A stretch of 64,000 nucleotides of DNA from Haliotis cracherodii (GCF_022045235.1 NW_027266270.1:25358001-25422000), one strand, 5' to 3'; positions 18,159-53,258 are shown, counted from the stretch's first letter. Translations and numbers: made by a program. The notes: generated by a model from the letters alone, not told the origin.

Positions 18159-18628
18159 ATGGCGTCCTCGTGTACCAGCATCGTCTTGCTCGTCTCCTGT
18201 CTAGCTTCACTGTCACAAGGTAACCCATAACGTCAGCCTTTTTAGGTGATCATATGCTGTATGTGATGTATTCCAATGTATACTATTTTTACATGAATAT
18301 CATTTAATGGTTTTGGTTCATTGTTGTTTTCAAGGTTACGTAAGATTGTTTTCGCGTCATGTAACCCTTTTTCAAAAGCGTAATATGGTCATGTTTATGT
18401 AGATAGTACCCGCATTTAACCACAGGCATGAACTTTTCAGTAAGGATTTTCAAATTGTTAAGTAAATGTTCTGCAAGTTTAGCTGACAAACATGTCGTCT
18501 AAGAAGTGAACGGGTGAATAGGTATGGCTCAACGCCGCATGAACAATCTTGCAGCTACATGAAGTCTCAAAGTAGGTGAGGTGAAATGGCGTTCAACGTC
18601 ACGTTCAAGATTATTGCACTTATACAAC

Positions 18629-21600: not shown

Positions 21601-24600
21601 CCCCTTCTCGTATTCCCCCCACAGTAATTCTGGATCGGAAGAGCACCCCTTCAGTTCGTATTGTTATGTCTTGCCCCATCTCGTATTCCCCCCACAGTAA
21701 TTCTGGATCGGAAGAGCACCCCTTCAGTTCGTATTGTTATGTCTTGCCCCTTCTCGTATTCCCCCCACAGGGATTCCGGGTCGGAAGAGCACCCCTTCAG
21801 TTCTTATTGTTATCAGAGACCACATGATATTATATGGTCTCTGTTGTTATGTCTTGCCCCTCGTCCATCTGTCGTAAACCTTGTCAGTATTTTGTTGATT
21901 AATAAAATACTAACCAAACTATGTCATGCATGAATGGATTGTCACATCACAGCTGCATGTATTATATAAATAAACTGCAAGTGATTCCTCGGCATATGAT
22001 TGGCTAACCCACAAGTCCATGTAACTAATATTCTCCTCAATTATAAACCTATTCATTGGGATCTATAGGCATTTTAACCTATTGTGAGGTTTTACTTTCC
22101 AGGCGGGTTAAATCTCATAAACAGGGACGTTGTAATGTCCCAGGGATTTTATTAATATAACTTCCGTTCAGATTGTAACATGTAATGAAATGTTAAATCA
22201 AATGACAAATGTTTTCTTTATATTCCCGGGTATCGAACTCGCAATCTTTATATCTGTAGCCCAGTGAGTGTACCACGAGGCTACAGAGGTGTTGATAAGT
22301 CTCACTGGTTTTTAGAATGTCCTTTTCAAGATCCGTACGCCAGCAACAGATATTCTAGGCACGTTTCCTAAGGTTCATGGAAAGTATGTTCGAAACATAA
22401 AAATGTTGATAAATGTTGTTTTATGTTTCTTTTTTCGGTTTATAAGTATGGAAAAACTTTTTCCCCTTGGTTTTTCCCTCTCCCCAGGGCATGCTCTGTC
22501 TACCAAACCTGGTGAGCGTGACTTGGATGATGCATACCATCGTATCCCAATTGCGTGGATCGATGCTCATGCTGTTATTCACTGGGTTCTCTGGACCAGG
22601 CTCGATAATTTACAAACCGCCGTCATGTAGCTGGAATACTGCTGAGTGCAGCGTTAAACAAACAAACCATAAAACAAAAACCGATATGTGCACATTGCGT
22701 AAATCCGCTACGCACTAATTTTTAAGTAAATGCAAAACAATTTGAAATCAAGTCGTATAATAAAATATTGTTTTCCTATAATACTATGTAATTTCTCAAT
22801 CTCAACCCTTACTCTAGTGAGCTGTCACTGGACTGTTTGCAAGGACAACTTCAACAATCAGACATGTATGACCACTGTCAAGGCCGCCCTGAATGATAAA
22901 ACCTTGTTTTGGTTTGGCACTAAGTATATGGAGATGTGTCCAAATGGTCCAGATTTTACCCAAAAGTGTACCAATCTTCGACCAAACATGAATGACTCCA
23001 TTATGAGCCGAATGTTCACCGGAAGTAACGTCACGACGGACTCGATAACCTCCATCATGAACATCACCTACCCCCGACCGCTGGAACGTAAGTAGACACC
23101 TGACGCAACCTTCACCTTGGAAGTTTGGGTTCTAACACCTTAAAAGTTTCAAACATATTTTTTTTATTAATTCAGTAATGTTTTATTGTTTATTGTTTAA
23201 CATCGCACTCAGCAATATTTCACCTTTATGACGGCGGTCTGTAAATAATCGAGAGATTGACAAAATGGCCCATCAACATCGATCTGTTCAGTTGGGATAC
23301 AGTGGTCAGTCTCACTGACTTGGTTGATGCATGTCATCGTATCCCAATTGCTTGGATCGATTCTCATGATATCTATCACTGGATTGTCCAAACTCGATTA
23401 TTTACAGACCGCCGTCAAAAAGCTGAAATATTGCTGAGTGTGGCGTTAAACAACAAACAAGCAAACAAACAAAATGTTGCTAAAAACGTCGTCAAATCAT
23501 GTTCACGACACATGTCATGATCACACCCACCCTTCTGTCGTCCTAGGCATATACACAGGATGCGGGGCAGAGATTAAACAGACTTCCAGGTCCACTTCCT
23601 TCAAAATTGACCCTCTCAACCCTCACTACAGGACGTCAGTTGATTACAGTGGCATGCCGGACGTCTCGTGGTCAGCGAAGCCCGACGTCAAATACACCGT
23701 AGTGTACTACGACACTGGCTATTTCATTGTCCACGGCATCTACGTCAACGCCGACGGTGGAAACATAACCATGGGCGAGGTAGGAAGATACGTACTTTGA
23801 GATCATTGATCACGCCGTCATATCCATGAAATACTGTTTAACGACGGTGATAAACCAAACTCACTTCCTCATTGATGAAGCTCGTGGAGCGATTTATATA
23901 CAACGGCCATAGTACCATGACACGCTGTGATAAACATGAAATAATGTTCGATGCTGTGTTAAACTAAACCCACCCACTCAACAATAAAGTCGTTGTCCGT
24001 GGTGTGGGCATGGGGAAAGTCGTTTTCAATGGTGTGAGCATGGAGAAAGTCGTCCGTGGTGTGAGCATGGGGAAAGTCGTTGTCCATGGCGGGAGGATAG
24101 GTAGAGTCGTTGTCCATAGCGGGAGCATGGGGAAAGTCGTTGTCCATGGCGGGAGCATGGGGAAAGTGGTTGTCCATGGTGTGAGCATGCGGAAAGTCGT
24201 TGTCCATGGCGGGAGTATGGGGAATGTCGTTGTCCGTGGCGGGAGCATGGGGAAAGTCGTTGTCCATGGCGGGAGCATGGGGAAAGTCGTTGTCCATGGT
24301 GTGAGCATGGGGAAAGTAGTTTGTCGTGGTGTGAGCATGGGTAAACTTGTTGGTCGTGGTGAGAGCATGGGTAAAGTCGTTGGTCGTGGTGTGAGCATGG
24401 GTAAAGTAGTTGGTCGTGGTGTGAGCATGGGTAAAGTCGCTGATCGTGGTGAGAGCATGGTTAAAGTCGTTGGTCGTGGTGAGAGCATGGGTAAAGTAGT
24501 TGGTCGTGGTGTGAGCATGGGTAAAGTCTCTGATCGTGGTGAGAGCATTGGTAAAGTCGCTGGTCGTGGTGTGAGCATGGTTAAAGTAGTTGGTCGTGGT

Positions 24601-27600
24601 GAGAGCATGGTTAAAGTAGTTGGTCGTGATGTGAGCATGGTTAAAGTAGTTGGTCGTGGTGTGAGCATGGGTAAAGTAGTTGGTCGTGGTGTGAGCATGG
24701 GTAAAGTCGTTGGTCGTGGTGTGAGCATGGGTAAAGTAGTTGGTCGTGGTGTGAGCATGGGTAAAGTCGCTTATCGTGGTGAGAGCATGGTTAAAGTCGT
24801 TGGTCGTGGTGTGAGCATGGTTAAAGTAGTTGGTCGTGATGTGAGCATGGGTAAAGTCGCTGATCGTGGTGAGAGCATTAGTAAAGTCGCTGGTCGTGGT
24901 GAGAGCATGGTTAAAGTAGTTGGTCGTGATGTGAGCATGGTTAAAGTAGTTGGTCGTGGTGTGAGCATGGTTAAAGTAATTGGTCGTGGTGAGAGCATGG
25001 GTAAAGTAGTTGGTCGTGGTGTGAGCATGGTTAAAGTAGTTGGTCGTGGTGTGAACATGGGTAAAGTCGCTGATCGTGGTGAGAACATGGGTAAAGCAGT
25101 TGGTCGTGGTGAGAGCATGGTTAAAGTAGTTGGTCGTGGTGTGAGCATGGGTAAAGTCACTGGTCGTGGTGTGAGCATGGTTAAAGTAGTTGGTCGTGGT
25201 GAGAGCATGGTTAAAGTAGTTGGTCGTGATGTGAGCATGGTTAAAGTAGTTGGTCGTGGTGTGAACATGGGTAAAGTAGTTGGTCGTGATGTGAGCATGG
25301 TTAAAGTAGTTGGTCGTGATGTGAGCATGGTTAAAGTAGTTGGTCATGGTGTGAGCATGGGTAAAGTAGTTGGTCGTGGTGAGAGCATGGTTAAAGTAGT
25401 TGGTCGTGGTGTGAACATGGGTAAAGTCGCTGATCGTGGTGAGAACATGGTTAAAGTAGTTGGTCGTGGTGAGAGCATGGTTAAAGTAGTTGGTCGTGAT
25501 GTGAGCATGGTTAAAGTAGTTGGTCATGGTGTGAGCATGGGTAAAGTCGTTGGTCGTGGTGAGAGCATGGGTAAAGTCGTTGGTCGTGGTGTGAGCATGG
25601 TTAAAGTAGTTGGTCGTGGTGTGAACATGGGTAAAGTCGCTGATCGTGGTGAGAACATGGGTAAAGTAGTTGGTCGTGGTGAGAGCATGGTTAAAGTAGT
25701 TGGTCGTGGTGTGAGCATGGGTAAAGTCACTGGTCGTGGTGTGAGCATGGTTAAAGTAGTTGGTCGTGGTGAGAACATGGTTAAAGTAGTTGGTCGTGGT
25801 GTGAGCATGGTTAAAGTAGTTGGTCGTGATGTGAGCATGGTTAAAGTAGTTGGTCATGGTGTGAGCATGGGTAAAGTCGTTGGTCGTGGTGAGAGCATGG
25901 GTAAAGTAGTTGGTCGTGGTGTGAGCATGGTTAAAGTAATTGGTCGTGGTGTGAACATGGGTAAAGTCGCTGATCGTGGTGAGAACATGGGTAAAGTAGT
26001 TGGTCGTGGTGAGAGCATGGTTAAAGTAGTTGGTCGTGGTCTGAGCATGGGTAAAGTAGTTGGTCGTGGTGAGAGCATGGTTAAAGTCGCTGGTCGTGGT
26101 GTGAGCATGGTTAAAGTAGTTGGTCGTGGTGAGAGCATGGTTAAAGTAGTTGGTCGTGATGAGAGCATGGTTAAAGTCGTTGGTCGTGATGTGAGCATGG
26201 TTAAAGTAGTTGGTCGTGGTGAGAGCATGGGTAAACTTGTTGGTCGTGGTGAGAACATGGGTAAAGTAGTTGGTCGTGGTGAGAGCATGGTTAAAGTAGT
26301 TGGTCGTTGTGTGAGCATGGTTAAAGTAGTTGGTCGTGGTGTGAACATGGGTAAACTTGTTGGTCGTGGTGTGAGCATGGGTAGAGTCGTTGGTCGTGGT
26401 GTGAGCATGGGTAAAGTAGTTGGTCGTGGTGTGAGCATGGTTAAAGTAGTTGGTCGTGGTGTGAGCATGGTTAAAGTAGTTGGTCGTGGTGTTAGCATGG
26501 TTAAAGTAGTTGGTCGTGGTGTGAGCATGGGTAAACTTGTTGGTCGTGGTGTGAGCATGGGTAGAGTCGTTGGTCGTGGTGTGAACATGGGTAAAGTCGT
26601 TGTCCGTGGTGTGAACATGGGTAAACTTGTTGGTCGTGGTGAGAGCATGGGTAAAGTCGTTGGTCGTGGTGTGAGCATGGGTAGAGTCGTTGTCCGTGGT
26701 GTGAACATGGGTAAACTTGTTGGTCGTGGTGAGAGCATGGGTAAAGTCGTTGGTCGTGGTGTGAACATGGGTAAAGTCGTTGTCCGTGGTGTGAACATGG
26801 GTAAACTTGTTGGTCGTGGTGAGAGCATGGGTAGAGTCGTTGGTCGTGGTGAGAGCATGGGTAAAGTCGTTGGTCGTGGTGTGAGCATGGGTAGAGTCGT
26901 TGTCCGTGGTGTGAACATGGTTAAAGTAATTGGTCGTGGTGTGAGCATGGTTAAAGTAGTTGGTCGTTGTGTGAGCATGGTTAAAGTAGTTGGTCGTGGT
27001 GTGAACATGGGTAAACTTGTTGGTCGTGGTGTGAGCATGGGTAGAGTCGTTGGTCGTGGTGTGAGCATGGGTAAAGTAGTTGGTCGTGGTGTGAGCATGG
27101 TTAAAGTAGTTGGTCGTGGTGTGAGCATGGTTAAAGTAGTTGGTCGTGGTGTTAGCATGGTTAAAGTAGTTGGTCGTGGTGTGAGCATGGGTAAACTTGT
27201 TGGTCGTGGTGTGAGCATGGGTAGAGTCGTTGGTCGTGGTGTGAACATGGGTAAAGTCGTTGTCCGTGGTGTGAGCATGGGTAGAGTCGTTGTCCGTGGT
27301 GTGAACATGGGTAAAGTCGTTGGTCGTGGTGTGAGCATGGGTAGAGTCGTTGTCCGTGGTGTGAACATGGGTAAACTTGTTGGTCGTGGTGAGAGCATGG
27401 GTAAAGTCGTTGGTCGTGGTGTGAACATGGGTAAAGTCGTTGTCCGTGGTGTGAACATGGGTAAACTTGTTGGTCGTGGTGAGAGCATGGGTAGAGTCGT
27501 TGGTCGTGGTGAGAGCATGGGTAAAGTCGTTGGTCGTGGTGTGAGCATGGGTAGAGTCGTTGTCCGTGGTGTGAACATGGGTAAACTTGTTGGTCGTGGT

Positions 27601-30600
27601 GTGAGCATGGGTAGAGTCGTTGGTCGTGGTGAGAGCATGGGTAAAGTCGTTGTCCGTGGTGTGAGCATGGGTAAAGTCCTTGTCCGTGGTGTGAACATGG
27701 GTAAACTTGTTGGTCGTGGTGAGAGCATGGGTAAAGTCGTTGTCCGTGGTGTGAACATGGGTAAAGTCCTTGTCCGTTGTGTGAACATGGGTAAAGTCGT
27801 TGTCCGTGGTGTGAGCATGGGTAAAGTAGTTGGTCGTGGTGTGAGCATGGGTAAACTTGTTGGTCGTGGTGTGAGCATGGGTAAACTTGTTGGTCGTGGT
27901 GAGAGCATGGGTAAAGTCGTTGTCCGTGGTGTGAACATGGGTAAAGTCGTTGTCCGTGGTGAGAGCATGGGTAAAGTCGTTGCCCGTGGTGTGACCATGG
28001 GTAAAGTCGCAGATCGTGGTGTGTAAACATGGATTGAGTCGCTGATCGTGGTGTGAGCATTGGTAAAGTCGTTGTCCATGGTGTGAGCATGGGTAAAGTC
28101 GTTGGTCGTGGTGTGAACATGGGTAAAGTCGTTGTCCGTGGTGTGAACATGGGTAAAGTCGTTGTCCGTGGTGTGAACATGGGTAAAGTCGTTGTCCGTG
28201 GTGTGAGCATGGGTAAAGTAGTTGGTCGTGGTGTGAGCATGGGTAAACTTGTTGGTCGTGGTGTGAGCATGGGTAAACTTGTTGGTCGTGGTGAGAGCAT
28301 GGGTAAAGTCGTTGTCCGTGGTGTGAACATGGGTAAAGTCGTTGTCCGTGGTGAGAGCATGGGTAAAGTCGTTGTCCGTGGTGAGAGCATGGGTAAAGTC
28401 GTTGCCCGTGGTGTGACCATGGGTAAAGTCGCAGATCGTGGTGTGTAAGCATGGATTAAGTCGCTGATCGTGGTGTGAGCATTGGTAAAGTCGTTGTCCA
28501 TGGTGTGAGCATGGGTAAAGTCGTTGGTCGTGGTGTGAACATGGGTAAAGTCGTTGTCCGTGGTGTGAACATGGGTAAAGTCGTTGCCCGTGGTGTGACC
28601 ATGGGTAAAGTCGCAGATCGTGGTGTGTAAGCATGGATTAAGTCGCTGATCGTGGTGTGAGCATGGGTAAAGTCGTTGTCCATGGTGTGAGCATGGGTAA
28701 AGTCGTTGCCCGTGGTGTGACCATGGGTAAAGTCGCAGATCGTGGTGTGTAAGCATGGATTAAGTCGCTGATCGAGGTGTGAGCATGGATAAAGTCGTTG
28801 GTCGGGGTGTGAGCATGGATAAAGTCGTTGGTCGGGGTGTGAGCACGGGTAAAGCTGTTGTCCATGATGTGAGCATGGGGAAAATCGTTGGCCGTGCTGT
28901 GGGCATGGGTAAAGTCGTTGGCTGTGGTGTAAGCATTGTGAAGATGCTGGTTTTGGTATGAGAATGGATGCAGACGATGGCCTTGATCTGAGTACTGTTC
29001 GAAGACTCTAATATTACATATGCTGTAAATAAATGCTCTGTTGAACCAGGCTGTCAAACCCCACAGCGGTCCCCTGAACACCCTCGATCGGCTAAACATC
29101 TATGTCTGGGTGGTCTTCGAGCAAACAAACGACATCCAAGTCGAAGAAATGAAACAATACATCAACGAAACCAATTCGTTTATGAATCCCCTGTTTATGC
29201 ACGAGTTCATACAGACATATGGTCTTCAAGGTAAACTCAATGTTTGAATACCGTTGCACTACTCACATGTGTCTTCTACAAACAGTCCAAATGACAACGT
29301 GGACATGAGGTTGTTGTTTTTCAAAATGGTTTAAATCAATCAACTAAACTGTAGACATTGACTCTATAAAAGAAGATATATAATGCGTAACTAGGACTTT
29401 CTCAAAGGCCGCGAAGATCCATATTGTATAGATCCCCTCAATTTGTTAACGTATTCACGTGTGTGGATGATTGCTTTCCTTACACTACCCAGAGACCATA
29501 TACCCTGCTCTTATCCTCTTCTCATGCTTACCAATCAATAATGCTTCCCTGCAACCCCCACACCCAGCACGCCCTAATCCAATAATGTTTCCCTGCAGCC
29601 CCCCACCTACCACGCCCCCCTCCAATAATGCTGACCTGCACCACCACCCCACACCCAGCACGCCCTAATCCAATAATGCTTCCCTGCAGCCCCCCACCTA
29701 CCACGCCCCCCTCCAATAATACTTCCCTGCAACCACCCCCTCTCCACCCCCACCCCCACCCCCACCCCACTGCTTCCCCCTCTGTATCATTACCAACTCT
29801 CCAAACCATTATTTCTATCAGCTTCATGTTACTTTTCAGGTCCCGTCAGCTTCGACATCGTGCGCTCCTATGGCGACGACTACGCCGCTGTGATGATGAG
29901 AGACAGGGGTGATACAAACAGGTGTCCCTACTTCCACCAAAAACGTGAGCCATCTATATCACATGCCGGCAAACCTCTAACCACTAGTTTAATTAGGGGA
30001 TATCTCTGTTGTTTTGACACCTCGGTTTTCTCTAACGCGGCTGGAATGAAAGTTGAAAGTTGACATTTGCAAGCTTTATTATTTACAATTTACCCATGCA
30101 CCGATCTCATGGCAGTGGAGGAGGTATACACCCGTGTTAGATAGTGGCAAAACGTGAAACAGACCAGAATTGGTTATTCGATGGTGAAGTAATTCATACG
30201 GGTATCATTGCAGTGTCGGGGCAGCTGTTGCCAGTCTGGTAACGTTTTCATAATGTTTATAATTTGTAGGTCAAATCCAATTTTCAAGAGTATAATTTCT
30301 GTTGCCCGGCAGTTTATGCATGGTTTTGTGACCCAAGGGGCATTGGTGGGCCGGTCGTCTAAGGTGCCGCGATTCGATGGCTGCCAGAAACCTATGTTCG
30401 TGGGTTCGAATCCCAGAAACGTCCTGATTATGTTTCTGGGTTTGCTAGCACCATAACCGCGCTCACTGGTTTCACCAAAGCTGTAAACATCTAAGATCTC
30501 ACACATCTAGTTGACAGGTCATGATATGTGACATACTGTCACTCACCTTTATGCAGCCCCCTGAGTGCAGCTCATTCTTAGATTCCACGATGGCTACGGT

Positions 30601-31577
30601 TGGAACACTGCTAAAAGAATGATAAAACACAGCTCACACACTCACGCCTTTACAGAGAGGTACTTAGCACGCCTCATATCATAACAAGCGTAGGAAGAAT
30701 TCCGTTCTGAAATATTTTCTTCTTCTTCCAGGACTCCAAGAGCACGTGGACAGCCATGGCGGTCTGACCTTCAACCTGTCGTCTGCTGAGGCCGGGATCT
30801 CTATTGACCTGCACTTTATGACCCCGGACATGCCCTTCCCCTTCTGCTGTTCTGAAATGAAGACTGGGTGAGATTGATTTACAGTTAACTATACAAACTT
30901 GTAACAATCCGTTTCTTTTGTTTTCCTTGACACGTGTAGAATATGTGAAGCTGAGTCTCAGTTTCTAACATTATGCTAAAAGTGACGTATGACCAAATCC
31001 ACTCACTCCATCACTGCGATTGGTATTATTGAAGAGAGCCTTGTTAATCATCATCATCATCATCTTCATCATCATCATTAGGCACGTAAGAAACCTGTCA
31101 TTGTGGGTACAAGTCCCGATGCGCCCGATGCGCCCCGATAATGTTCCTAGATTTGACAGCACCATATCAAGCTCGTGGTAAACGTCTGAAACCTGCATCA
31201 GTTCGGGTTTTCCTCCCATATTAAACCGACACGCTGTTGACTCTGGAATACACTGACACTGTTCACAGCAACGTTGAACCGAACTCACTTTTATCATCAT
31301 AACCCTCACACTCATTTAATATAAGAAGAAGTTTATTCATGTTAAAGACCATATGATTTTCAGAATAAACAGCACACATAGATAAGTTGCTGATTAAATG
31401 TATTATTGTGATAATCATTGTTGTTGATATCATTTTATTGTGACAATCATTTTTGTTGATATTATCATCATCATCATTACATCATCATCATCATCATTAT
31501 TATTATTAATTATATATTCAGTATTTATTTCTGTGTCATCATCATCTTCTTAATCACTGATAAATTAAGTTATTATT

Positions 31578-31619
<42 letters not shown>

Positions 31620-34600
31620 TTGTTGTTGTTGTTATATATTCATTATTTACTTATGTGTCATCATTATCTTCTTAATCACTGATAAATATTGTCTCATTCA
31701 GCGCCGCCAACGTTCATGTCAATTATAAGTCCACTGGGGAGATCATGGCCGCCAAAGTGAGAGCAAAGCCAATGGTGCACTTTGTGACAAGAAACACCTC
31801 CGCCCCTGCCAGAACTACCCTGCAAGGTAGTAAATGTCCTGTCAGGCTTCCCAACCAACATGTGTATGGCTGCAATGACACTCAGCCATTGCTAGATCCC
31901 ACGTGGATTATATACTTCAGTTTCATTTATAAAAGAGTGTAAGGTATAAACACACAATGCCATTTTAGAAAGTGGTCAGATGTAACAAATGGTATGTTTG
32001 GGATAACACTTTCTTAATAAAGTTCAGATTCTCGTACTTAAAGTAATAATAGTAAGGTAATTTAAATCCAACGTTTCTAAGACAGCACACCATTTAGGAT
32101 TCCGGGTTCGAAGAGGCCCTCACCAACCAAGGCGAAACCGCATTATCGGTGGTTTGAGAAGGGAGCTAACTCAGTTTGCCTAATCGAAAGTTCGAGGTGG
32201 GCCCACATTCGAAACTAAACGCACTTGTTGTTGAGAATATGTACAATGTAAACTAACCCGCATTACGAACTGTTATTTTGTCTATTAAAAATAAGTATTA
32301 TGACTTAATAATTGGATTAGAATGTACAAATGCGATGATACTACAGCAGAACTCACTTCTATGAACATCGCCAAACTAGGTCGTGGGGTCATTAATATTC
32401 ATGAGTTATTCCTTTTATGGAACAAGTTCTCGGAAAAGTTTGAGGCTTGTATCATGACTGTCATGTCCGAGATCAATTTAAGTGTAGACATATTTCCTGC
32501 GGCAAACTTATGATCAGATTGATGTGTTATACTGGAAAAAGTAGAATGAGTAGTTTTGCCTCTGTAAATTTAATTTGAAGTAGATCGAAGTTTCTTGCTT
32601 TGTAGCCTATTTTTGCAAAACTAGTGTGGTCAGCTATGATGACGTTATTCAAACTTCAAGGACTTTGTGTGCATTTATAAAGATATTTCCCATCAATATT
32701 ACAAAATGAGAATTATATATAATGTCACAAACCCATGCAAATGTGATCCCACTAGTCTAAATGACTCAGTCAACCCAATGAAGCCCAGCGATTTACAAAT
32801 GTGGGCCCACCTGTTTCGATCACTGTAAGACGGGAACAATGTGGGCCCACATTTTAGAAAATGGTTATAATTAAGCCAGGCTAATGAAGCTTAGCGATTT
32901 ATAAATGTGGTCCCTCCTGTTGCAATCACTATGACGGAAGAACGTCTTCCTACTAGGAGATATACAAAAGTGGGCCCACTTGTTTCGATCACCATATATG
33001 GCGGGAACAATGTGGGCCCACATTTGAGAAAATGATTATCAATATTTAAGTAGAATTTCGCGATTAGTAAATGTGGTCCCTCCTGTTGCAATCAATATGA
33101 CGGAAGAACGTCTGCCCACATTTAGGAATTGATTATCAGAACTAATTAAACAACCTAACGAAGCTAGGTTATATACAAATGTGGGCCCACTTGTTTCGAT
33201 CACCATATATGACGGGAACAATGTGGGCCCACATTTTAGAAAATGGTTATCAGCACTAAACCAATCTAAGAAGATGTACGGATGGAAACATAAATATATA
33301 AAGCATTCAAACATTTAATTAAGAATACGTTTTACCTTAGGGATAAGCTGGGCATTTAATAGCTAGACCAATAACGTACGGCGTGACTGACGCCATTTCT
33401 CGCAAATACGAAAACAACGGAGATAGCTCCCGTCTGAATTTAGAGTGACCTCCCTTTCCCAATATGAACCACTTATAATGCGGTTTCGCCCCAACCAATG
33501 CTGTTCGTAATAATCGACTTAATGGATTGGGTGGTCAACAAACCGAGAGAGCGTGGATCGTTGCTCATAATTTCAATCACTGGCCACATTCGGTTATTTA
33601 CAGACCGCCGTCATGTAGCTGGAGTTGATTTCATATTTGCTATTCTCGCCCAACAGGTCAGTTCTTCACCTTGATGCTGGTCAACCCAACAAAGGAGTTG
33701 AATACATCAACCCCCAACACTGACGTACATTGGCTCGTTGTCAACATCAACGCCGATGACGTCGCTAACGGTGACGTCGTCGTCGAATACATGCCTCCGA
33801 TGCCAAGTGCAACAAAGCGGATGTATCTGGCCCTTCTGTACAAGCAAGCGAACAGAACTGACCAAGTGAAGAATATCACAGGCCTGCTCGGTTCTGGGTG
33901 CCCTCAGAACACTAAGTACGAGACGCTACTGTGGAGATTTCGTCGCTATTTGACTAAAATAACGCCGATTTGACGTTCTTTTTTAAATTGTCGAGATAGT
34001 TGTGTTTGCCTTTTTATGAAGAACGTATTTTGTCGTTGATAGTCTTGCATTCAATTCTATATTTACGAAATTAAGTACCTGGTAAATATCGGACATATTG
34101 ACATGTTAGACACCTAGACAGGAGCTGTCTCCATTTCATTATAATACCTTGTACATGATGAATTTAATACCCCACAAGAAAACGTCACCAGTCATCAATA
34201 CGGCGGCAACAAATTATCATGTCCATATTAAAATCTTAAACAAATTAAATTTGCAATAAAATAATTTTCACAAAATATTCATCAACAGAGGGATGTTGAA
34301 AACAAAATGAACAATAATGGCTACAATTCTTTCCCTGATTTTCATCTTGCATCATGTTTTGACTGCTATGCGATTACCTCCCTTACATAATGAATTTGAT
34401 AAATACAGTGTGTCTACAGTAAGTGAGCGCTGTAGCCTATTCAGGCTACATAATCTCAACTAATTTTCATATCTCTACTGTTTCATATCCCCGCTCTCTT
34501 TCATATCTCCACTCTGTTTCATATCTTTGCAATGTTTTATATCCCCGCTCTGTTTCATATCTCCACTTTGTTTCATATCTCCACTCTTTTTTATATCTCC

Positions 34601-36210
34601 AGTTTCTTTAATATCCCCGTTCTGTTTCATATCCCTGTTCTGTTTAATAACCCCGCTTTGTTTCATATCTCCGCTCTGTTTCATATCTCTGCTCTGTTTC
34701 ATATTGCCGCTCTGTTTCATATCTAAAATTAGTTTCATATCTCCACTCTACTTCAAATCCCGATCTGTTTCATGTCTCCACTTTGTTTCATATCCCCGCT
34801 CTGTTTCATATCTCCACTCTGTTTCATATCCCCGCTCTGTTTCATATCTCCACTCTGTTTCATATCTCCACTTGGTTTCATATCCCCGCTCTGTTTCATA
34901 TCTCCACTCTGTTTCATATCTCCACTCTGTTTCATATCTCCACTGTTTCATATCCTCGATCTGTTTCATATCTCCACTTTGTTTCATATCCCCACTCTGT
35001 TTCATATCTCCACTCTGTTTCAGATGGCCACTCTGTTTCATATACCCGTTCTGTTTCATATTTCCTCTTTGTTTTATATCCCCGCTCTGTTTCATATCTC
35101 CACCCGGGGCTATCGGGTAGCCTAGTGGTTAAAGCCTTCGCTCGTCACGCCGAAGACCCGGGTTCGATTCCTGACGTGGGTACAATGTGTGAAGCCCATT
35201 TCCGGTGTCATATATCCGCTCTCTTTCCATATGTAGAATACCTGCCTTTCTGTTGATGAATTTACGACCCAGAAGCTTTGTTGTAAAATTCCAAACACAT
35301 ATCTGTTTCATATCTCCGCTCTGTTTCATATCTCTGCTCTGTTTCATATCTCCGCTCTCTTTCATGTCTCCACTCTATTTCATATCTCTGCTTTGTTAAG
35401 TATCTCCGCTCCATTTCATATCTCTGCTCTGTTTCATATCTCCGCTCTGTTTCATATCTCTGCTCTGTTTCATATCTCCGCTCTGTTTCATATCTCCGCT
35501 CTGTTTCATATCTCTGCTCTGTTTCATATCTCCACTCTGTTTCATATCTCCGCTCTGTTTCATATCTCCGCTCTGTTTCATATCTCTGCTCTGTTTCATA
35601 TCTCCGCTCTGTTTCATATCTCCCCTCTGTTTCATATCTCCGCTCTGTTTCATATCTCCACTCTGTTTCATATCTCCGCTCTGTTTCATATCTCCGCTCT
35701 GTTTCATATCTCCGCTCTGTTTCATATCTCCGCTCTGTTTCATATTTCCACTCTGTTTAATATCCCCGCTCTGTTTCATATCCCCGTCTTGGTTTCATAT
35801 CCCCGATCTGTTTCATATCCCCGATCTGTTTGATATATCCGCTCTGTTTCCATATGTAGAACTTCAGTACCTGCCTTTCTTTGATGATTTTAAGACCCAG
35901 AAGCATTGTTGTGAAAATTCCAAACACATTATCAAACCCTCTTCTGTTTAGGTGCAAGTTCCAGGTGAAAAACTATGTCATGAAGAACAGCCTCGTTCTG
36001 AGTGGACTCCGCCAGATGGACGTTAAACCCGACCACTACAGCAAACACCAGGAAGTGAAGAACGGGATGAGATCCGAGAATGAAGCATGTGAAGGCATGG
36101 CTGGTTACAGAAATCCGTGCCCAACAGGAACTGGGCTTCCTCTGACATCCTCCATGGTCGCCATCTATGCCATGGCGTTGCTGGCTGTTGTCTGTCAAAA
36201 GGCTTTTTGA
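18159..36210 (+). CDS. Secreted or GPI-anchored protein with two tandem PEBP (phosphatidylethanolamine-binding/RKIP-like) domains, copy A, 9 exons, 542 aa
   Basis: Exons 18159-18219, 22818-23087, 23547-23779, 29050-29230, 29840-29944, 30732-30867, 31702-31826, 33657-33915 and 35952-36210 are all GT-AG, phase-compatible and give 1629 nt open. Signal peptide MASSCTSIVLLVSCLASLSQVSC. Domain 1: PDVSW..YTVVYYD..HGIYVN..YVWVVFEQ..YGLQGPVS..DDY. Domain 2: FTLMLVNP..HWLVVNI..EYMPPMP..YLALLYKQ. Hydrophobic C-terminal tail SSMVAIYAMALLAVVCQKAF. Confidence 0.88.
20723..21812. repeat. 73-bp tandem repeat, about 15 units, intron 1 of copy A only
   Basis: Unit GCCCCTTCTCGTATTCCCCCCACAGTGATTCTGGATCGGAAGAGCACCCCTTCAGTTCGTATTGTTATGTCTT. 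A single unit is present in copy B (about 48187-48280). Confidence 0.95.
23985..28935. repeat. 30-bp minisatellite, about 165 units, intron 3 of copy A
   Basis: Consensus GTGAGCATGGGTAAAGTCGTTGGTCGTGGT, with occasional 32-bp variants from 28021 onward. Confidence 0.97.
29535..29785. repeat. C-rich degenerate tandem repeat in intron 4 (also at about 51648-51940)
   Basis: Recurrent CCAATAATGCT(TC/GA)CCTGCA..CCCC units. Confidence 0.75.
32131..33490. mobile_element. 1.36-kb non-autonomous DNA transposon with GG..CC termini and an 8-bp TSD (Merlin-like), copy A intron 7 only
   Basis: TIR GGCGAAACCGCATTAT at both ends. TSD CCAACCAA (32123-32130, 33491-33498). Empty site in copy B near 53690. Internal AATGTGGGCCCAC repeats. 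Confidence 0.9.
34465..35855. repeat. 18-bp minisatellite in intron 8 of copy A, interrupted by a SINE fragment (about 35106-35207)
   Basis: Unit CTCTGTTTCATATCTCCG. It produces the MKQSGD and FHISAL ORFs. A shorter array is in copy B at about 54712-55150. Confidence 0.93.
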
Positions 36211-37513
36211 AATTCTGCGATTTTATATTCGTCTTTTAACTAACAAGGCTGCATTTAAAGGAGAGACCAGGCTCCCTGGCCCATTTCTAAACGTTGAAAT
36301 TCGTGCGGAAGAAAAACACGACACCTTGTCTCTGTGTACTTTGTACCTACTAGATGGCAATTCACCATAAATTTGAGTTAGCCCTTGGTTGGAAATGATT
36401 TGTATCAAACTTGATATTCCGATTGGCCTGATCCTAGTCTTCCTTTTACACTGCGAATAGCAACTGACAAGATGCTTTGTGTTAATCAGAATCCATATTA
36501 TCACGTTATTACAAGCCTATATAGCGTGCCTGGACATATTGTCAAATCGACCGTAGCACTCCGCCAGGCTAAAGACAACGTTTCGCTGTTACGTAATCCT
36601 ATATTTACAGTGCTCGCTTTGATGAGGGTGAATTTCTTATTTTTACATTGTATGTTTGACTGTTATAACCGGGAATAAATAATGATGCATGTCGGCCTGT
36701 TTCCTTTGGGCATGTTGCGCTGTGGTAGAACGCGCAGTGTACATCCGGGTACCAAGGATGAGTGTAGAGCGCCGCGCACAAGATTCAGAAACCGGATAGA
36801 GTCGCATTTGACACCTTGACTTGCTGATAACTTCCGGAATGACAACTCATTCGATGGCTCAAACCAGAGAACATATACAGAATCAATATTACGTCTCTGT
36901 TTGACGCTTACCCGAGTTATTCTTCTTTTTAACAATTCATCTTATAAGATGGGTGAATATCTAACAATGATTAAATGATTCGGTCGTCACGCCGAAGTCA
37001 TTCGGCCAGATATTTCTGGAATATTGCTAAAAGCGGCGGAAAAACACTCAGTCACTCTAATACACACATACTCCGGTACACCAGAACATTATATTCAAGT
37101 ATCACGTTTTTAATACTAAACCTCACATTTCTATGTTTATTAAGTATTTTTGTTTTGATGGATAAAATGACTGAAGGTTAAAAAACAGAAAGTGGCATCT
37201 TTTTTCATAAGACATTTCTTCAAATAAAATGTTTTGGCGTTTAGAATTTATTGATTTAAAATATATCTTGAACTAGGTATCCCATGACTGTGTTTGAGGA
37301 GGAGCTACTTGTTTCATTGTTATTCTAATTTCAGTAAGGTCAGTTGATCATGGTGCTGTATTTGTCATTTTGTATTTCAAATGTTGATTTTTGTAATAAA
37401 ATTTAACAAAACAGCTGTATTTCTTTATGTCTATTAGGGGTGGGTTAGTAGCATGGAAAAACGTTAGATAAAATGAAGGGGACGTCGGCAAAATATGATC
37501 TAAGACAAATTCT

Positions 37514-47014: not shown

Positions 47015-50000
47015 GGGGGTGGGGTGGGGTGTTATCGTGCTAGCCCACTGAGATACCTTGCCGCAGTGTATCATGGGTAGCACACTCGACCTGACAGACG
47101 CTCTACCCACTAGGCAAGAATGCGAGTCCCACCCATAAGAATACTTCAAAACTTTCATTCTCACCTTCCTCTATGTTGTGGCTTAATGTGTAAAATAGCC
47201 ATTTGGAAAGCATGTTTTGACCATGTTATTGCGCAACAAATAACGATAAACGAAGACGGAGAAATCAGGTGACATTTTCTTTTTGGGTGTGAACATAATC
47301 ATAACATTTGCTAAGGCCCTAAACAGTCACCTTCAGTCAAAGGTGTGCTCGTCAGCAAAAGTTGAATTGTATTTATGAGAAGTTCATTTTCTTCCGGAAG
47401 CTTGAAAATACACCGTCCTTCTGCATCCTATTTAGCTACAGCACTGTAACATTTTTTATATATTCAATTTTATTTTAAAATTCATAATTTGAGAAACATC
47501 AAAACAAAAGCATAAATGCAAATAGCCAGACAGTCATTTGGAACTTACGTATATATGAAGTATCAACTTTTCAAGGGGTCTTTGACTCTCTCTTTTTTAT
47601 CAATTCTAAAGATTCCCTTTTCGTCGCTATTGGGCAAAACATAATAGGTAAAAGGTAAAAAAAGGCACCCCTAAAGCTTGACGGCTATTTGGTCAGTTCA
47701 CCCCAAACGCCTGATACAACATCACCATCCTGATATGCCGCGAAAAATGTCAAGCCCACAAACACAGTACTGCTGAATACGTTATGCAAATACCGATGCT
47801 TTGTCAGATCTTGTCCTTGAGCCTGACATGACTGTCACACGTTGCTTGCCGTTGCTCTTGACATAAAAGGACGTTTACCTCGGTGCAATGCAGGCAGGTC
47901 AGGTGCGCTCGTGCTCACGCGCTGGAAAGGAAATGACATAATGGGGTATTGGGTCCGGCATGAAACTTGTCAATGGTCGAGGTATGCTACGTGATAAATG
48001 GCGAGTAGAAAATGGAGAATAATGGGATCAGATACCCTAGAAGAGAAGTCAGATGACCGACAGGGATGCGGCTGATTAACTTCCCTCTTTATAGAGCATT
48101 TTGTTCTTCCTTATCCCCTGGATAATGTTATCACGTGAGGAGGCTATTGTCTCCACATGCCGTCATACATGTGTTCAGCATGAAAAGCCCCCTTCTCGTA
48201 TCCCCCCCCCCCCCCCCCCCCCCACACACAGGGATTCCGGGTCGGAAGAGCACCCCTTCAGTTCTTATTGTTATGTCTTGCTCCTCGTACGTCGTCCGAT
48301 CGTCCATCTGTCGTAAACCTTTTCATTTTTTACATCTCCTTTTCAGTATTTTTGTTGATTAATAAAATACTAACCACACTATGTCATGCATGAATGGATT
48401 GTCACATCACAGCTGCATGTAGTATATAAATAAACTACAAGTGATTCCCCGGCATATGATTGGCTAAGTCCATGTAACTAATATATAAAGAAGAAATAAA
48501 TTTTAAAAAAACAAAAAACAAAAACAATTCTACTCTAAAGAAAACTCGCAGAGCGGCCTCGTCAGGAATTTGTTACGTAGTTAGAATATGTCCTCAGCAA
48601 CCCATGCTTGTCGTAAGAGGCGACTAACGGGATCAGGTAGCCAGGATTGCTGACTTTGATGATGCATACCATCGTATCCCAATTGCGTGGATCGATGCTC
48701 ATGCTGTTATTCACTGGGTTCTCTGGACCAGACTCGATAATTTACAAATCGCCGTCATGTAGCTGGAATACTGCTGAGTGCGGCGTTAAACAAACAAACC
48801 ATAAAACAAAAACCGATATGTGCACATTGCGTAAATCCGCTACGCACTAGTTTTTAAGTAAATGCAAAACAATTTGAAATCAAGTCGTATAATAAAATAT
48901 TGTTTTCCTATAATACTATTTAATTTCTCAATTTCAACCCTGACTCTAGTGAGCTGTCACGGGACTCTTTGCAAGGACAACTTCAACAATCAGACATGTA
49001 TGACCGCTGCCAAGGCCGCCCTGAATGATAAAACCTTGTTTTGGTTTGGCACTAAGTATATGGAGATGTGTCCAAATGGTCCAGATTTTACCCAAAAATG
49101 TACCAATCTTCGACCAAACGTGAGTGACTCAATTATGAGCCGAATGTTCACCGGAAGTAACGTCACGACGGACTCGATAACCTCAATCATGAACATCACC
49201 TACTACCTACCGCTGGAACGTAAGTAGACACCTGACACAACCTTCACCTTGGCAGTTTGGGTTCTAACACCTTAAGAGTTCCAAACATATATTTTCATTA
49301 ATTCAGTAATGTTTGATTGTTTATTGTTTAACACCGCACTCAGCAATATTTCACCTTTTTGACGGCGGTCTGTAAATAATGGCCATCAACATCGATCTGT
49401 TCAGTTGGGATACAGTGGTCAGGCTCCCAATTGCTTGGATCGATTCTCATGAAATCTATCACTGGATTTTCCAAACTCGATTATTTACAGACCGCCGTCA
49501 AAAAGCTGAAATATTGCTGAGTGTGGCGTTAAACAACAAACAAGCAAACAAAGAAAATGTTGCTAAAATCGTCGTCAAATCATGTTTACGACACATGTCA
49601 TTATCACACCCACCCTTCTGTCGTCCTAGGCATATACAAAGGATGCGGGGCAGAGATTAAACAGACTTCCAGGTACACTTCCTTCAAAATTGACCCTCTC
49701 AACCCTCACATAAGGACGTCAGTTGAGTTCAGGGACATGCCGGACGTCTCGTGGCCAGCGAAGGCCGGCGTCAAGTACACCGTAGTGTACTACGACACTG
49801 GCAATTACATTATCCACGGCATCTACGTCAACGCCGACGGTGGAAACATAACCATGGGCGAGGTAAGAAGATACGTACTTTGGGTTCATTGATCACGCCG
49901 TCATATACATGAAATACTGTTCAATGCTGTGTTAAACTTAACCCACCCACTCAACAATAAAGTCGTTGTCCGTGGTGTGAGCATGGCTAAAGTCGTTGTC

Positions 50001-53000: not shown

Positions 53001-53215
53001 GGTCTGACCTTCAACCTGTCGTCTGCTGAGGCCGGGATCTCTATTGACCTGCACTTTATGACCCCGGACATGTCTTTCCCCTTCTGCTGTTCTGCAGTGA
53101 AGACTGGGTGAGATTGATTTACAGTTAACTATACAAACTTGTAACAATCCGTTTCTTTTGTTTTCTTTGACATAAATTATTGATAAATTAAGTCTTCTTC
53201 TTCTTCTTCTTCTTC

Positions 53216-53258
<43 letters not shown>

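What the first reader, a model, noticed from the sequence alone, without database searches (positions are those of the whole stretch)
23547..49862. Paralogues diverge almost only by amino-acid changes in PEBP domain 1: candidate diversifying selection
Hand codon comparison of A versus B (aa-changing codons : purely synonymous codons) gives exon 1 0:0, exon 2 8:3, exon 3 13:1, exon 4 2:1, exon 5 5:2, exon 6 5:0, exon 7 4:3, exon 8 1:3 and exon 9 2:0, about 40:13 in total. Exon 3 has clusters such as HYRTSVDYSG to HIRTSVEFRD, SAKPD to PAKAG, and DTGYFIVH to DTGNYIIH, which lies right in the pocket-forming D..H segment. The domain 2 core (exons 8-9) is almost unchanged. All Cys, reading frames and splice dinucleotides are preserved, which argues against simple decay. 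Copy B loses two sequons (NDS, NTS). Inference: a variable distal binding domain on a conserved membrane-proximal domain, the pattern seen in immune or gamete-recognition proteins.
Basis: partly seen in the sequence, partly recalled or inferred. Interest (0 to 1): 0.75.

Follow-up and report, generated by a model that had tools for sequence, protein, structure and literature searches.

The report
Abalone double-PEBP tandem gene duplicates
Two neighbouring copies of an uncharacterised abalone cell-surface gene really do differ mostly by amino-acid changes, but the ratio of amino-acid to silent changes is about what unconstrained change predicts, so diversifying selection is a hint and not a result.

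Summary
A ~28 kb tandem duplication carries two intact 9-exon genes. Their exon translations are identical to Haliotis cracherodii XP_071100213.1 (copy A) and XP_071100214.1 (copy B).

- dN/dS is 0.83-0.95 overall and 1.07-1.22 for exons 2-5. For exon 3 it is 2.8-3.2, and none of these is significantly above 1 (p >= 0.21).
- Exon 3's replacement rate (8%) exceeds non-coding A/B divergence (3.66%; p 0.004-0.009 uncorrected). Against its own flanking introns p is 0.05-0.08.
- Exons 8-9 are constrained. Silent divergence in exon 8 is normal, so gene conversion is not the cause there.
- Neither copy is decaying: there is no indel in 1,629 coding bases where 7.9 are expected (P=0.0004).
- Copy A is transcribed and spliced as modelled. 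Copy B was not seen in two RNA-like runs of the same organism, but a B-type transcript occurs in a relative.

Red-abalone proteins show the duplication predates that species split. Gene conversion makes the gene a mosaic.

Differences shared across species are all amino-acid-changing and lie only in exons 2-5, whereas recent ones run about 1:1. This is the one suggestive sign of early adaptive divergence (p 0.01-0.09).

The scan noted the same stretch before as s1-826201.

The parts
18159..18219 (+). Copy A exon 1 (start codon, signal-peptide-like MASSCTSIVLLVSCLASLSQ)
   Evidence: Identical in B. Exon 1 letters appear as the loose end before exon 2 in an X17 contig.
22818..23087 (+). Copy A exon 2 (Cys-containing N-terminal extension)
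   Evidence: 8 replacement and 3 silent codons against B.
23547..23779 (+). Copy A exon 3 (first half of PEBP domain 1, with the D166..H173 segment)
   Evidence: 13:1, dN 0.085, dS 0.030.
29050..29230 (+). Copy A exon 4 (PEBP-1 strand carrying the altered 'HRY' motif, DRLNIY)
   Evidence: 2:1.
29840..29944 (+). Copy A exon 5 (C-terminal part of PEBP-1)
   Evidence: 5:2.
30732..30867 (+). Copy A exon 6 (linker and start of PEBP domain 2)
   Evidence: 5:0.
31702..31826 (+). Copy A exon 7
   Evidence: 4:3. Holds the NTS sequon that B lacks.
33657..33915 (+). Copy A exon 8 (PEBP-2 core)
   Evidence: 1:3. Weak Pfam PF01161 match.
35952..36210 (+). Copy A exon 9 (end of PEBP-2, hydrophobic GPI-like tail, stop)
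   Evidence: 2:0.
46465..46525 (+). Copy B exon 1
48950..49219 (+). Copy B exon 2
   Evidence: Joint 49219>49630 (GT..AG) in RNA-like contigs.
49630..49862 (+). Copy B exon 3
   Evidence: Joint 49862>51167.
51167..51347 (+). Copy B exon 4
   Evidence: Joint 51347>51998.
51998..52102 (+). Copy B exon 5
   Evidence: Joint 52102>52972.
52972..53107 (+). Copy B exon 6
   Evidence: Joint 53107>53342.
53342..53466 (+). Copy B exon 7
   Evidence: Joint 53466>53859.
53859..54117 (+). Copy B exon 8
55247..55505 (+). Copy B exon 9
29094..29508 (+). Likely recent gene-conversion tract: 411 aligned columns with no A/B mismatch (3' part of exon 4 plus intron 4; the B counterpart begins at 51211)
   Evidence: none of 5,000 random placements of the mismatches gave a run this long. 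It contains the three exon-4 sites where both copies carry a species-specific residue (aa 212, 215, 222).
23985..28936 (.). Intron 3 of A: 30-bp minisatellite, 165 copies (B has 36 copies at 49958-51032). This accounts for most of the size difference between the copies.
   Evidence: The spliced contigs run from exon 3 directly to exon 4. The long ORFs in it give no significant Pfam match.

Best explanation
These are two intact tandem paralogues of a fast-evolving gene family found in molluscs and an annelid. The family encodes secreted proteins, probably GPI-anchored, built from two PEBP-fold domains.

The duplication is older than the split between black and red abalone. Since then the copies have diverged by about 3.7% at neutral sites, and gene conversion has patched parts of them.

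Selection has kept both reading frames whole and holds the C-terminal third (the PEBP-2 core and tail) tightly. It tolerates nearly free amino-acid change over the N-terminal two-thirds, mostly at loop positions that also vary among distant relatives.

The 40:13 excess of amino-acid-changing codons therefore reflects weak constraint (dN/dS about 1). It does not demonstrate diversifying selection. Copy A evolves faster than copy B in both species and is expressed.

Shown here: gene structure, counts, rates, intactness, transcription of A, the conversion mosaic and the PEBP folds. Inferred: the GPI anchor, surface location, ligand binding and the neutral reading of the replacements.
For: - Structure and identity. 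Every exon peptide is an exact substring of P0044 (copy A) or P0048 (copy B).
- Splicing: single spliced contigs with GT..AG joints at all six modelled borders between exons 2 and 8 in X15, X16 and X20, and at four of the six in X17. X15 and X16 carry A-type letters.
- Rates: dN/dS is 0.83 overall, 1.07 for exons 2-5, 2.83 for exon 3 (p=0.27) and 0.28 for exons 8-9. With kappa 1.81 taken from non-coding differences these become 0.95, 1.22, 3.16 (p=0.21) and 0.32.
- Neutral yardstick: 242/6606 = 3.66% non-coding divergence against dS 4.3%.
- Intactness: 0 indels against 7.9 expected (P=0.0004) and no stop codon (P=0.11).
- Position of the differences: they sit at positions less conserved in 12 distant relatives (majority fraction 0.41 against 0.51, p=0.015), and 22 of 40 are in coil.
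- Family-wide weak constraint on exon 3: dN/dS is 0.44-1.01 in 14 other paralogue pairs of this genome.
- Mosaic: 15 sites group the copies by orthology, all in exons 2-5, and 21 group them by species. In the trees, (A-black, A-red) gets 99/96 for exons 2-5 and (A-red, B-red) gets 100/99 for exons 6-9. The AU test rejects orthology there at p=5e-5. There is also the 411-column identical tract.
- PEBP: the family profile hits solved PEBPs with both domains (5tvd 3.6e-17; 2jyz 1.8e-15). The AF2 model has pLDDT 81. Foldseek gives probability 1.00 to PEBP1, FT and mL38.
Against: - Exon 3's replacement rate (14.5/180 = 8%) is 2.2 times the non-coding rate (Fisher p 0.004-0.009, uncorrected for nine exons) and 1.9 times that of its own flanking introns (p 0.05-0.08). 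Weak constraint alone predicts at most the neutral rate.
- The differences shared with relatives' A-type and B-type transcripts are 11 replacement and 1 third-position change inside a replaced codon. Lineage-specific differences are 10:10 (Fisher p=0.023, tested). A purely neutral history predicts the same ratio in both classes.
- Several variable residues (169, 170, 172, 201, 203) align with the pocket-lining segments of PEBP1. This is where a functional shift would be expected.
- Transcription of copy B in this species is not shown.
Confidence: 0.55

Rival explanations
1. Episodic adaptive divergence. Soon after the duplication, positive selection fixed a set of replacements in PEBP domain 1 and its N-terminal extension. 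Alternatively, selection has since held these sites apart against gene conversion. Either way, A and B would be functionally distinct surface binders that are now each under purifying selection.
For: - All 15 amino-acid sites that separate A from B in both black and red abalone lie in exons 2-5, and none lies in exons 6-9.
- At the nucleotide level, 12 of 12 such positions are B-type in X20 and A-type in X17. None of the 10 classifiable silent differences is of that old class.
- Old against recent in exons 2-5 is 17:0 against 13:6 (p=0.02).
- The probability of no silent change among 17 under neutrality is 0.012-0.019.
- Exon 3 dN exceeds non-coding divergence.
- Orthology-type and species-type sites are interleaved within exon 2 (aa 27 | 29, 30, 35 | 40, 41 | 48). 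This is expected if conversion sweeps around sites held by selection.
Against: - The pairwise dN/dS tests are not significant.
- The old-against-recent contrast weakens to p=0.09, and the neutral test to 0.057-0.087, if the one unclassified silent site of exons 2-5 is old.
- The classes were assigned from two sources: red-abalone proteins, and contigs of two coded organisms that may be chimeric. Only 34 of 56 differences could be classified.
- Merging differences that lie 3 nt or less apart reduces exon 3 from 16 differences to 12 events.
- The variable sites are also poorly conserved family-wide.
Confidence: 0.3
2. Ongoing diversifying (arms-race) selection on a distal recognition domain, as in immune or gamete-recognition proteins.
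For: - The architecture is extracellular: a signal-peptide-like start, 10-11 sequons and a hydrophobic tail.
- The loops at aa 138-157 and 167-172 change repeatedly. Site 169 is Y, F or N in the four ingroup proteins, and A-black and B-black each carry their own changes there.
- Exon 3 dN/dS among other paralogues reaches 1.0.
Against: - Recent, lineage-specific differences run 10 replacement to 10 silent. That is a dN/dS of about 0.3, which is purifying.
- No dN/dS estimate is significantly above 1.
- No tissue or interaction data link the gene to immunity or fertilisation.
- No paper in the held library mentions these genes.
Confidence: 0.1
3. One copy is a dying or dead duplicate, and the replacement excess is simply its neutral decay.
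For: - dN/dS is about 1 over exons 2-7.
- No B-type contig was seen in the two RNA-like runs of the same organism.
- Branch lengths are asymmetric.
Against: - Both reading frames are whole, with all splice sites and all 16 Cys kept.
- There are 0 indels against 7.9 expected (P=0.0004).
- Exons 8-9 are strongly constrained between the copies.
- The faster copy (A) is the transcribed one.
- A B-type spliced transcript exists in a relative (X20), and the red-abalone B orthologue has the same 542-aa open frame.
- Changes lie on both lineages.
Confidence: 0.05

Closest known systems
PEBP/RKIP family (Pfam PF01161; human and bovine PEBP1, plant FT/TFL1)
   Same: Both domains have the PEBP fold. The family profile matches solved PEBPs, and Foldseek gives probability 1.00. 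The Asp and His that frame the pocket segment (D166/H173 in domain 1, H395 in domain 2) are invariant or nearly so in the family.
   Different: - PEBP1 is cytosolic and has one domain. This protein has two domains in tandem behind a signal-peptide-like start, 10-11 N-glycosylation sequons and a hydrophobic C-terminal tail.
- The DPDxP motif is replaced by D-T-G-Y/N with a 9-residue deletion in domain 1, and by NPTKE in domain 2.
- The His of the GxHR motif aligns with N204 in domain 1 and R425 in domain 2.
- P0044 alone stays under Pfam's gathering score (21.7 against 24).
Secreted nematode PEBPs (Tm16 of Trichuris muris, PDB 5tvd)
   Same: It is the best solved-structure match of domain 1 (E=3.6e-17). 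That Tm16 is a secreted PEBP is recalled, not tested here.
   Different: It has a single domain and no membrane tail.
'Uncharacterized protein C56G2.4-like' proteins of molluscs and annelids (RefSeq names)
   Same: Length is the same (about 530-560 aa) and the double-PEBP layout is shared. Members occur in Haliotis, Dreissena, Pecten, Aplysia, Potamilus and Owenia. The two genes here are members of this family.
   Different: No member has a described function. The C. elegans namesake itself was not examined here.
Young tandem duplicates that evolve in concert by gene conversion, with asymmetric divergence
   Same: There is an identical tract longer than chance, gene trees differ between segments, and one copy is faster in both species.
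   Different: Nothing unusual. This is the common pattern.
Abalone lysin/VERL, the textbook positively selected reproductive proteins (recalled, not from a call)
   Same: Same genus, extracellular proteins, rapid amino-acid change.
   Different: Here dN/dS is not significantly above 1, and no reproductive role is known.

Membership tests
PEBP superfamily (PF01161) | Significant sequence match to the family model | tested here: met
   P0044 alone scores 21.7 bits, under the cut-off of 24. P0001 scores 25.1 bits and P0002 34.9, each with one matched stretch. P0008 and P0014 score 50.6 and 61.6 bits with two stretches. A profile of 18 family members hits solved PEBPs with domain 1 (E 3.6e-17 to 1e-12) and with domain 2 (1.8e-15).
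PEBP superfamily (PF01161) | PEBP fold | tested here: met
   The AF2 model of P0044 has pLDDT 81.2 and pTM 0.74. Foldseek gives probability 1.00 to PEBP1/RKIP, FT/TFL1, Tm16 and mL38.
PEBP superfamily (PF01161) | Canonical anion-pocket motifs DPDxP and GxHR (motif names recalled) | tested here: not met
   The alignment to 1b7a/5tvd and to 2jyz with the sequences shows the following. In domain 1 the motif is D-T-G-Y/N with a 9-residue deletion, and Asn204 aligns with the motif's His. In domain 2 it is NPTKE, and Arg425 aligns with the motif's His. Only the pocket-segment His (H173, H395) is kept. The fold is retained but the classical pocket is remodelled.
Genes under diversifying (positive) selection | dN/dS significantly above 1, for the gene, a domain or a site class | tested here: not met
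   Exons 2-5 give 1.07-1.22 (p 0.61-0.47) and exon 3 gives 2.8-3.2 (p 0.27-0.21). Site and branch-site models need orthologue DNA, which was not available.
Genes under diversifying (positive) selection | Replacement rate above the local neutral rate | tested here: inconclusive
   Exon 3 is 8% against 3.66% non-coding (p 0.004-0.009 uncorrected). Against its flanking introns (4.3%) p is 0.05-0.08. There are 12 events if clustered changes are merged.
Genes under diversifying (positive) selection | Excess of fixed replacements over polymorphic ones (McDonald-Kreitman) | not tested
   Reads were laid on the RNA-like runs. A proxy, old differences against lineage-specific ones, gives p 0.02-0.09.
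Pseudogene / decaying duplicate | Frame disruptions or loss of splice sites | tested here: not met
   There are none in either copy. P(0 indels)=0.0004 at the non-coding indel rate.
Paralogues homogenised by gene conversion | Identical tracts longer than chance, and segment trees that disagree | tested here: met
   A 411-column tract, P<0.0002. Exons 2-5 group by orthology (99/96), while exons 6-9 group the two red-abalone copies (100/99; AU p=5e-5).
GPI-anchored surface proteins | N-terminal signal peptide plus a C-terminal small-residue site, spacer and hydrophobic tail; release by PI-PLC | not testable with these tools
   By eye only: MASSCTSIVLLVSCLASLSQ at the start and ...GTGLPLTSSMVAIYAMALLAVVCQKAF at the end. 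The model gives a helix at 524-541. No predictor or assay was available.

The most novel reading that the evidence does not exclude
The 15 residues that distinguish copy A from copy B in more than one abalone species all lie in the N-terminal extension and PEBP domain 1. They include positions that align with the pocket-lining segments (170, 172, 203). These residues may have been fixed by positive selection right after the duplication, or may be held apart by selection while gene conversion homogenises the sequence around them. Abalones would then carry two functionally distinct surface receptors of an entirely uncharacterised double-PEBP family of molluscs and annelids.
Probability: 0.3. Interest if true: 0.55.

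Novelty: new member of a known kind. Interest (0 to 1): 0.3.

Why it matters
If the hint of early adaptive divergence held up, it would mark the remodelled pocket of PEBP domain 1 as the working surface of a widespread surface-protein family in molluscs and annelids that nobody has studied. It would also give a clean case of paralogue-specific residues surviving gene conversion. As it stands, the main value is corrective. A 3:1 excess of amino-acid-changing codons between young duplicates is the neutral expectation, and the conserved-against-variable contrast here comes from constraint on one domain plus conversion patches. It does not come from a demonstrated arms race.

Tried and rejected
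- Pfam on single exon peptides gave only a weak PBP hit for exon 8 (E=4e-4). Exon 2-7 peptides and the minisatellite ORFs gave nothing significant.
- The long ORFs (up to 1,497 aa) in the 30-bp minisatellite were considered as coding and rejected. The spliced contigs run from exon 3 directly to exon 4, and there is no significant family match.
- 'The 3' half was homogenised in this genome' was considered and rejected for exon 8. Its silent divergence is 5%, and introns 6-8 (3.8-6.0%) are as diverged as introns 1-3 (3.4-5.1%). The species-wise signal in exons 6-9 rests mainly on the red-abalone pair.
- Mapping variable residues on the 3-D model was not possible, because the tool returns no coordinates. 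Only secondary structure and motif alignment were used.
- Ectopic conversion from the more distant paralogues (32-43% identity in exon 3) as a source of the clustered changes was considered unlikely and not tested.
- Rfam and tRNA scans of the window found nothing.
- Paper searches were search listings only, and no paper was read. 'C56G2.4' gave 0 papers. Haliotis plus phosphatidylethanolamine-binding gave 4, none relevant by title or abstract. PEBP/GPI-anchored/tandem/mollusc gave 35, none relevant among the 15 listed. Abalone plus PEBP gave 3, none relevant. 'PEBP domains' phrases gave 29; of the 15 listed, 14 are on plant genes and 1 on mL38. Six locus or accession names gave 0. 'Not in print' means only these searches of the held library. 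Supplementary files were not consulted.
- The search of earlier findings by words added nothing.
- ended in a file-writing error after printing its results. Nothing was lost.

Full report
WHAT IS THERE. The window is G000:C7:25358001-25422000 of a 1.18 Gb genome. Self-comparison shows a tandem segmental duplication with a unit of about 28 kb. Copy A runs from about 11254 to 39000 and copy B from about 39902 to the window's end, in blocks of 80-97% identity broken by minisatellites of different length.

Each unit holds a 9-exon gene on the + strand. I read the borders from A/B alignments and fixed them.
- Copy A: 18159-18219, 22818-23087, 23547-23779, 29050-29230, 29840-29944, 30732-30867, 31702-31826, 33657-33915, 35952-36210.
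- Copy B: 46465-46525, 48950-49219, 49630-49862, 51167-51347, 51998-52102, 52972-53107, 53342-53466, 53859-54117, 55247-55505.

All introns are GT-AG. Exon lengths are equal in both copies, phases agree, and the total is 1,629 nt.

The search with exon 3 (collected) led to database proteins. Every in-frame exon peptide of A is an exact substring of P0044 (XP_071100213.1), and every one of B is an exact substring of P0048 (XP_071100214.1). Both are 'uncharacterized protein [Haliotis cracherodii]', 542 aa. The gene models are therefore already in RefSeq.

TRANSCRIPTION. I laid four RNA-like runs on copy B, window 48900-54150. These are contigs only, and their RNA status was guessed by the tool. 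In X15 and X16 (the window's organism by label), one contig per run (1,517 and 1,491 nt) crosses exons 2 to 8. It has GT..AG joints exactly at the modelled borders: 49219>49630, 49862>51167, 51347>51998, 52102>52972, 53107>53342 and 53466>53859. Intron-free contigs with these joints indicate spliced RNA.

Laid on B, these contigs show 9, 15, 3, 7, 6, 8 and 4 other letters in exons 2-8. In the part of the gene they cover, A and B differ at 8, 16, 3, 7, 6, 8 and 4 positions. Every listed A/B position carries the A letter at full depth, so this is the transcript of copy A.

No B-type contig covers those places in these two runs. Contigs show presence and not absence, so B's transcription in this species remains open.

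In X20 (another organism), a 2,596-nt spliced contig is B-type at 12 of 12 lineage-diagnostic positions. In X17 (a third organism) the contigs are A-type at the same 12. Loose ends in X17 carry exon 1 letters before exon 2 and exon 9 letters after exon 8, which supports introns 1 and 8 in that relative.

THE OBSERVATION. Amino-acid-changing to purely silent codons per exon are 0:0, 8:3, 13:1, 2:1, 5:2, 5:0, 4:3, 1:3 and 2:0, which sums to 40:13. There are 58 nucleotide differences in 1,629 nt, and none lies in a split codon. The quoted residue clusters are present. All 16 Cys are kept.

There are two corrections. First, B lacks the sequons at N79 and N360 but gains NVS at N77, giving 11 against 10. 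Second, only 20 of the 40 changes lie in the PEBP-1 core (exons 3-5). Eight lie in exon 2 and twelve in exons 6-9.

IS IT MORE THAN CHANCE? Replacement and silent sites stand at 1254:350 (Nei-Gojobori). With kappa 1.81, estimated from 115 transitions and 127 transversions in non-coding DNA, they stand at 1218:387. The observed differences are 43.5:14.5.

| Region | dN/dS, kappa 1 | dN/dS, kappa 1.81 | One-sided Fisher p for >1 (kappa 1; kappa 1.81) |
|---|---|---|---|
| All exons | 0.83 | 0.95 | 0.73; 0.58 |
| Exons 2-5 | 1.07 | 1.22 | 0.61; 0.47 |
| Exon 3 | 2.83 | 3.16 | 0.27; 0.21 |
| Exons 8-9 | 0.28 | 0.32 | 0.98; 0.97 |

 The headline ratio is therefore the neutral expectation.

Two further yardsticks were applied.
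- Well-aligned, repeat-masked non-coding sequence differs at 242 of 6,606 columns (3.66%). Per intron the range is 0.8-6.0%, close to dS (4.3%).
- Replacement differences are uneven among exons (p=0.0009), while silent ones are even (p=0.46).

Exon 3's replacement rate (14.5/180) exceeds the non-coding rate (p 0.004-0.009 before correction for nine exons). Against its own flanking introns (23/537) p is 0.05-0.08. Four of its 16 differences lie within 3 nt of another, which leaves 12 events.

Exons 8-9 are below neutral (3/397, p=0.0006). Exon 8 has three silent differences in 59 silent sites, so its conservation reflects constraint and not conversion. Exon 9 has no silent difference and sits in a 166-column identical run, which is not significant.

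My filter for 'good' non-coding columns (70% or more local identity) may bias the neutral rate downward. If so, the exon 3 excess would be weaker still.

NOT DECAY. Well-aligned non-coding sequence holds 32 short indels, 24 of them not multiples of three. At that rate the coding sequence should hold 7.9 indels, and it holds none (P=0.0004). Fifty-eight random substitutions would leave the frames free of stops with P=0.11. Both copies have been kept open by selection.

HISTORY. Red abalone has both genes: P0049 is A-like and P0047 is B-like. H. asinina (P0001) and H. rubra (P0053) each contribute one 537-aa orthologue.

Among the four ingroup proteins:
- 15 sites group by orthology (A-black = A-red, B-black = B-red). 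They fall 5, 5, 1 and 4 in exons 2-5, with none in exons 6-9.
- 21 sites group by species: 4, 1 and 3 in exons 2-4, and 2, 3 and 8 in exons 7-9.
- 1 site shows the crossed pattern.

Maximum-likelihood trees agree. In exons 2-5, (A-black, A-red) is supported at 99/96, and holding the two black-abalone copies together costs 31 log-likelihood units (AU p=0.05). In exons 6-9, (A-red, B-red) is supported at 100/99 and orthology is rejected (AU p=5e-5).

The duplication therefore predates the species split, and conversion has since made the gene a mosaic. In this genome the clearest tract is 29094-29508, with 411 identical columns (0 of 5,000 random placements of the mismatches reach this). It contains the three species-type sites of exon 4.

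The 40 black-abalone differences divide as follows: 15 of the orthology type, 11 specific to A, 8 specific to B, 1 crossed, 4 complex and 1 in a gapped column. Of the 15 older ones the outgroups make A derived at 7 and B derived at 2, and 6 are unresolved. The A branches are longer than the B branches in both species and both segments. Change is therefore on both copies, with A the faster.

THE ONE SUGGESTIVE SIGNAL. For 34 of the 56 nucleotide differences in exons 2-8, one search lists the state in X20 (B-type) and X17 (A-type). I classified them.
- Differences shared across species: 11 replacement, plus one third-position change inside the replaced Ile/Tyr codon.
- Lineage-specific differences: 10 replacement and 10 silent.
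- Crossed: 1 and 1.

The contrast gives Fisher p=0.023. Within exons 2-5, combining protein and contig evidence, old against recent is 17:0 against 13:6 (p=0.02). This becomes p=0.09 if the one unclassified silent site is counted as old. The probability of no silent change among 17 neutral changes is 0.012-0.019, or 0.057-0.087 for at most one among 18.

This fits either a burst of adaptive replacements after duplication or selection holding these sites apart under conversion. However, it rests on contigs of coded organisms that may be chimeric, on mixed sources and on small numbers. The recent 1:1 ratio (dN/dS about 0.3) argues against an ongoing arms race.

WHAT THE PROTEIN IS. Alone, P0044 matches Pfam PBP only in domain 2 and below the cut-off (21.7 against 24 bits). 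The relatives P0008 and P0014 pass with two stretches. A profile of 18 family members (A2) hits solved PEBPs with domain 1 (Tm16 5tvd 3.6e-17; bovine and human PEBP1 about 1e-13) and with domain 2 (CG7054 2jyz 1.8e-15; mL38; FT). The AlphaFold2 model (pLDDT 81.2, pTM 0.74) matches PEBP1, FT, Tm16 and mL38 with probability 1.00.

The alignment puts residues 167-173 (T-G-Y/N-F/Y-I-V/I-H) on the DPDAP...WHH pocket segment of PEBP1, with a 9-residue deletion. It puts D/N201-R-L/P203-N204 beside the motif His, which is Asn here. The identity of the PEBP1 pocket residues is recalled and not tested.

A signal-peptide-like start, 10-11 sequons and a hydrophobic tail preceded by small residues suggest a GPI-anchored surface glycoprotein. 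This is inference, because no predictor was available.

The family has at least 12 members in this genome, six of them within about 300 kb of the same contig (C7). It occurs in gastropods, bivalves and the annelid Owenia, always unnamed. Exon 3 is weakly constrained family-wide, with dN/dS of 0.44-1.01 in 14 other pairs. The A/B differences fall at positions that also vary among distant relatives (p=0.015).

VERDICT. Its statistical meaning is ordinary: dN/dS is about 1 over the N-terminal two-thirds of two intact young duplicates, with a constrained C-terminal third and a conversion mosaic. Diversifying selection is not demonstrated. An early adaptive or selectively maintained divergence of PEBP domain 1 remains a live minority reading (about 0.3), testable with orthologue DNA. 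No paper in the held library mentions these genes (listings only).

Noticed in passing
window 23985-28936 and 49958-51032: A 30-bp minisatellite in intron 3 has 165 copies in A and 36 in B. It is strongly G-rich on the + strand and is open in several reading frames (ORFs up to 1,497 aa, Thr/Pro-rich on the - strand). The spliced contigs run from exon 3 directly to exon 4, so it is intronic.
   Followed up: partly
window 34478-35855 / 54725-55150; 37514-39060 / 57290-58762; 20725-21813; 56023-56745; 13998-14715: There are further minisatellites. An 18-bp array in intron 8 has 76 copies in A against 24 in B. A 38-bp array downstream has 41 against 39. A 73-bp array (15 copies) in intron 1 was reported for A only, and a 71-bp array (10 copies) downstream for B only. 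A 55-bp array lies upstream. Copy-number changes in these arrays account for most of the length difference between the duplicated units.
   Followed up: no
window 49428-49603 (= 23345-23518) and about 11 other places; 52147-52217 and about 12 other places: Two short interspersed repeat families lie in and around the genes. They have very high word depth in all four RNA-like runs (about 1e5). Copies of the first flank exon 2 in both A and B. One copy of the second is inserted just after exon 5 in B only. No tRNA or Rfam match was found.
   Followed up: partly
L004 (G000:C7:25424555-25427788) and five other exon-3 hits on C7 within about 300 kb: The two genes belong to a chromosomal cluster of the same family. 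The next member starts about 4 kb beyond the window's end, and its exon 3 peptide reads the same as part of P0045 (XP_071099728.1, 32% identical to P0001).
   Followed up: partly
L006 (G000:C7:25521461-25521688) and L007 (G000:C11:11932855-11933082): The exon 3 sequences of two family members on different contigs differ by 1 nt in 228. This is either a very recent inter-chromosomal duplicate or an assembly duplication.
   Followed up: no
window 49088, 51229, 51275 (copy-B coordinates of the laid contigs): The A-type transcripts of X15 and X16 differ from the window's copy A at one exon-2 position. X16 carries two more exon-4 differences inside the conversion tract. This looks like polymorphism within the species.
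   Followed up: no
window 17433-17727: A second identical A/B run of 291 columns lies upstream of exon 1 (P=0.004). It may be another conversion tract or a conserved promoter region.
   Followed up: no
window 7053-7210: A run of 158 N (gap or masked).
   Followed up: no
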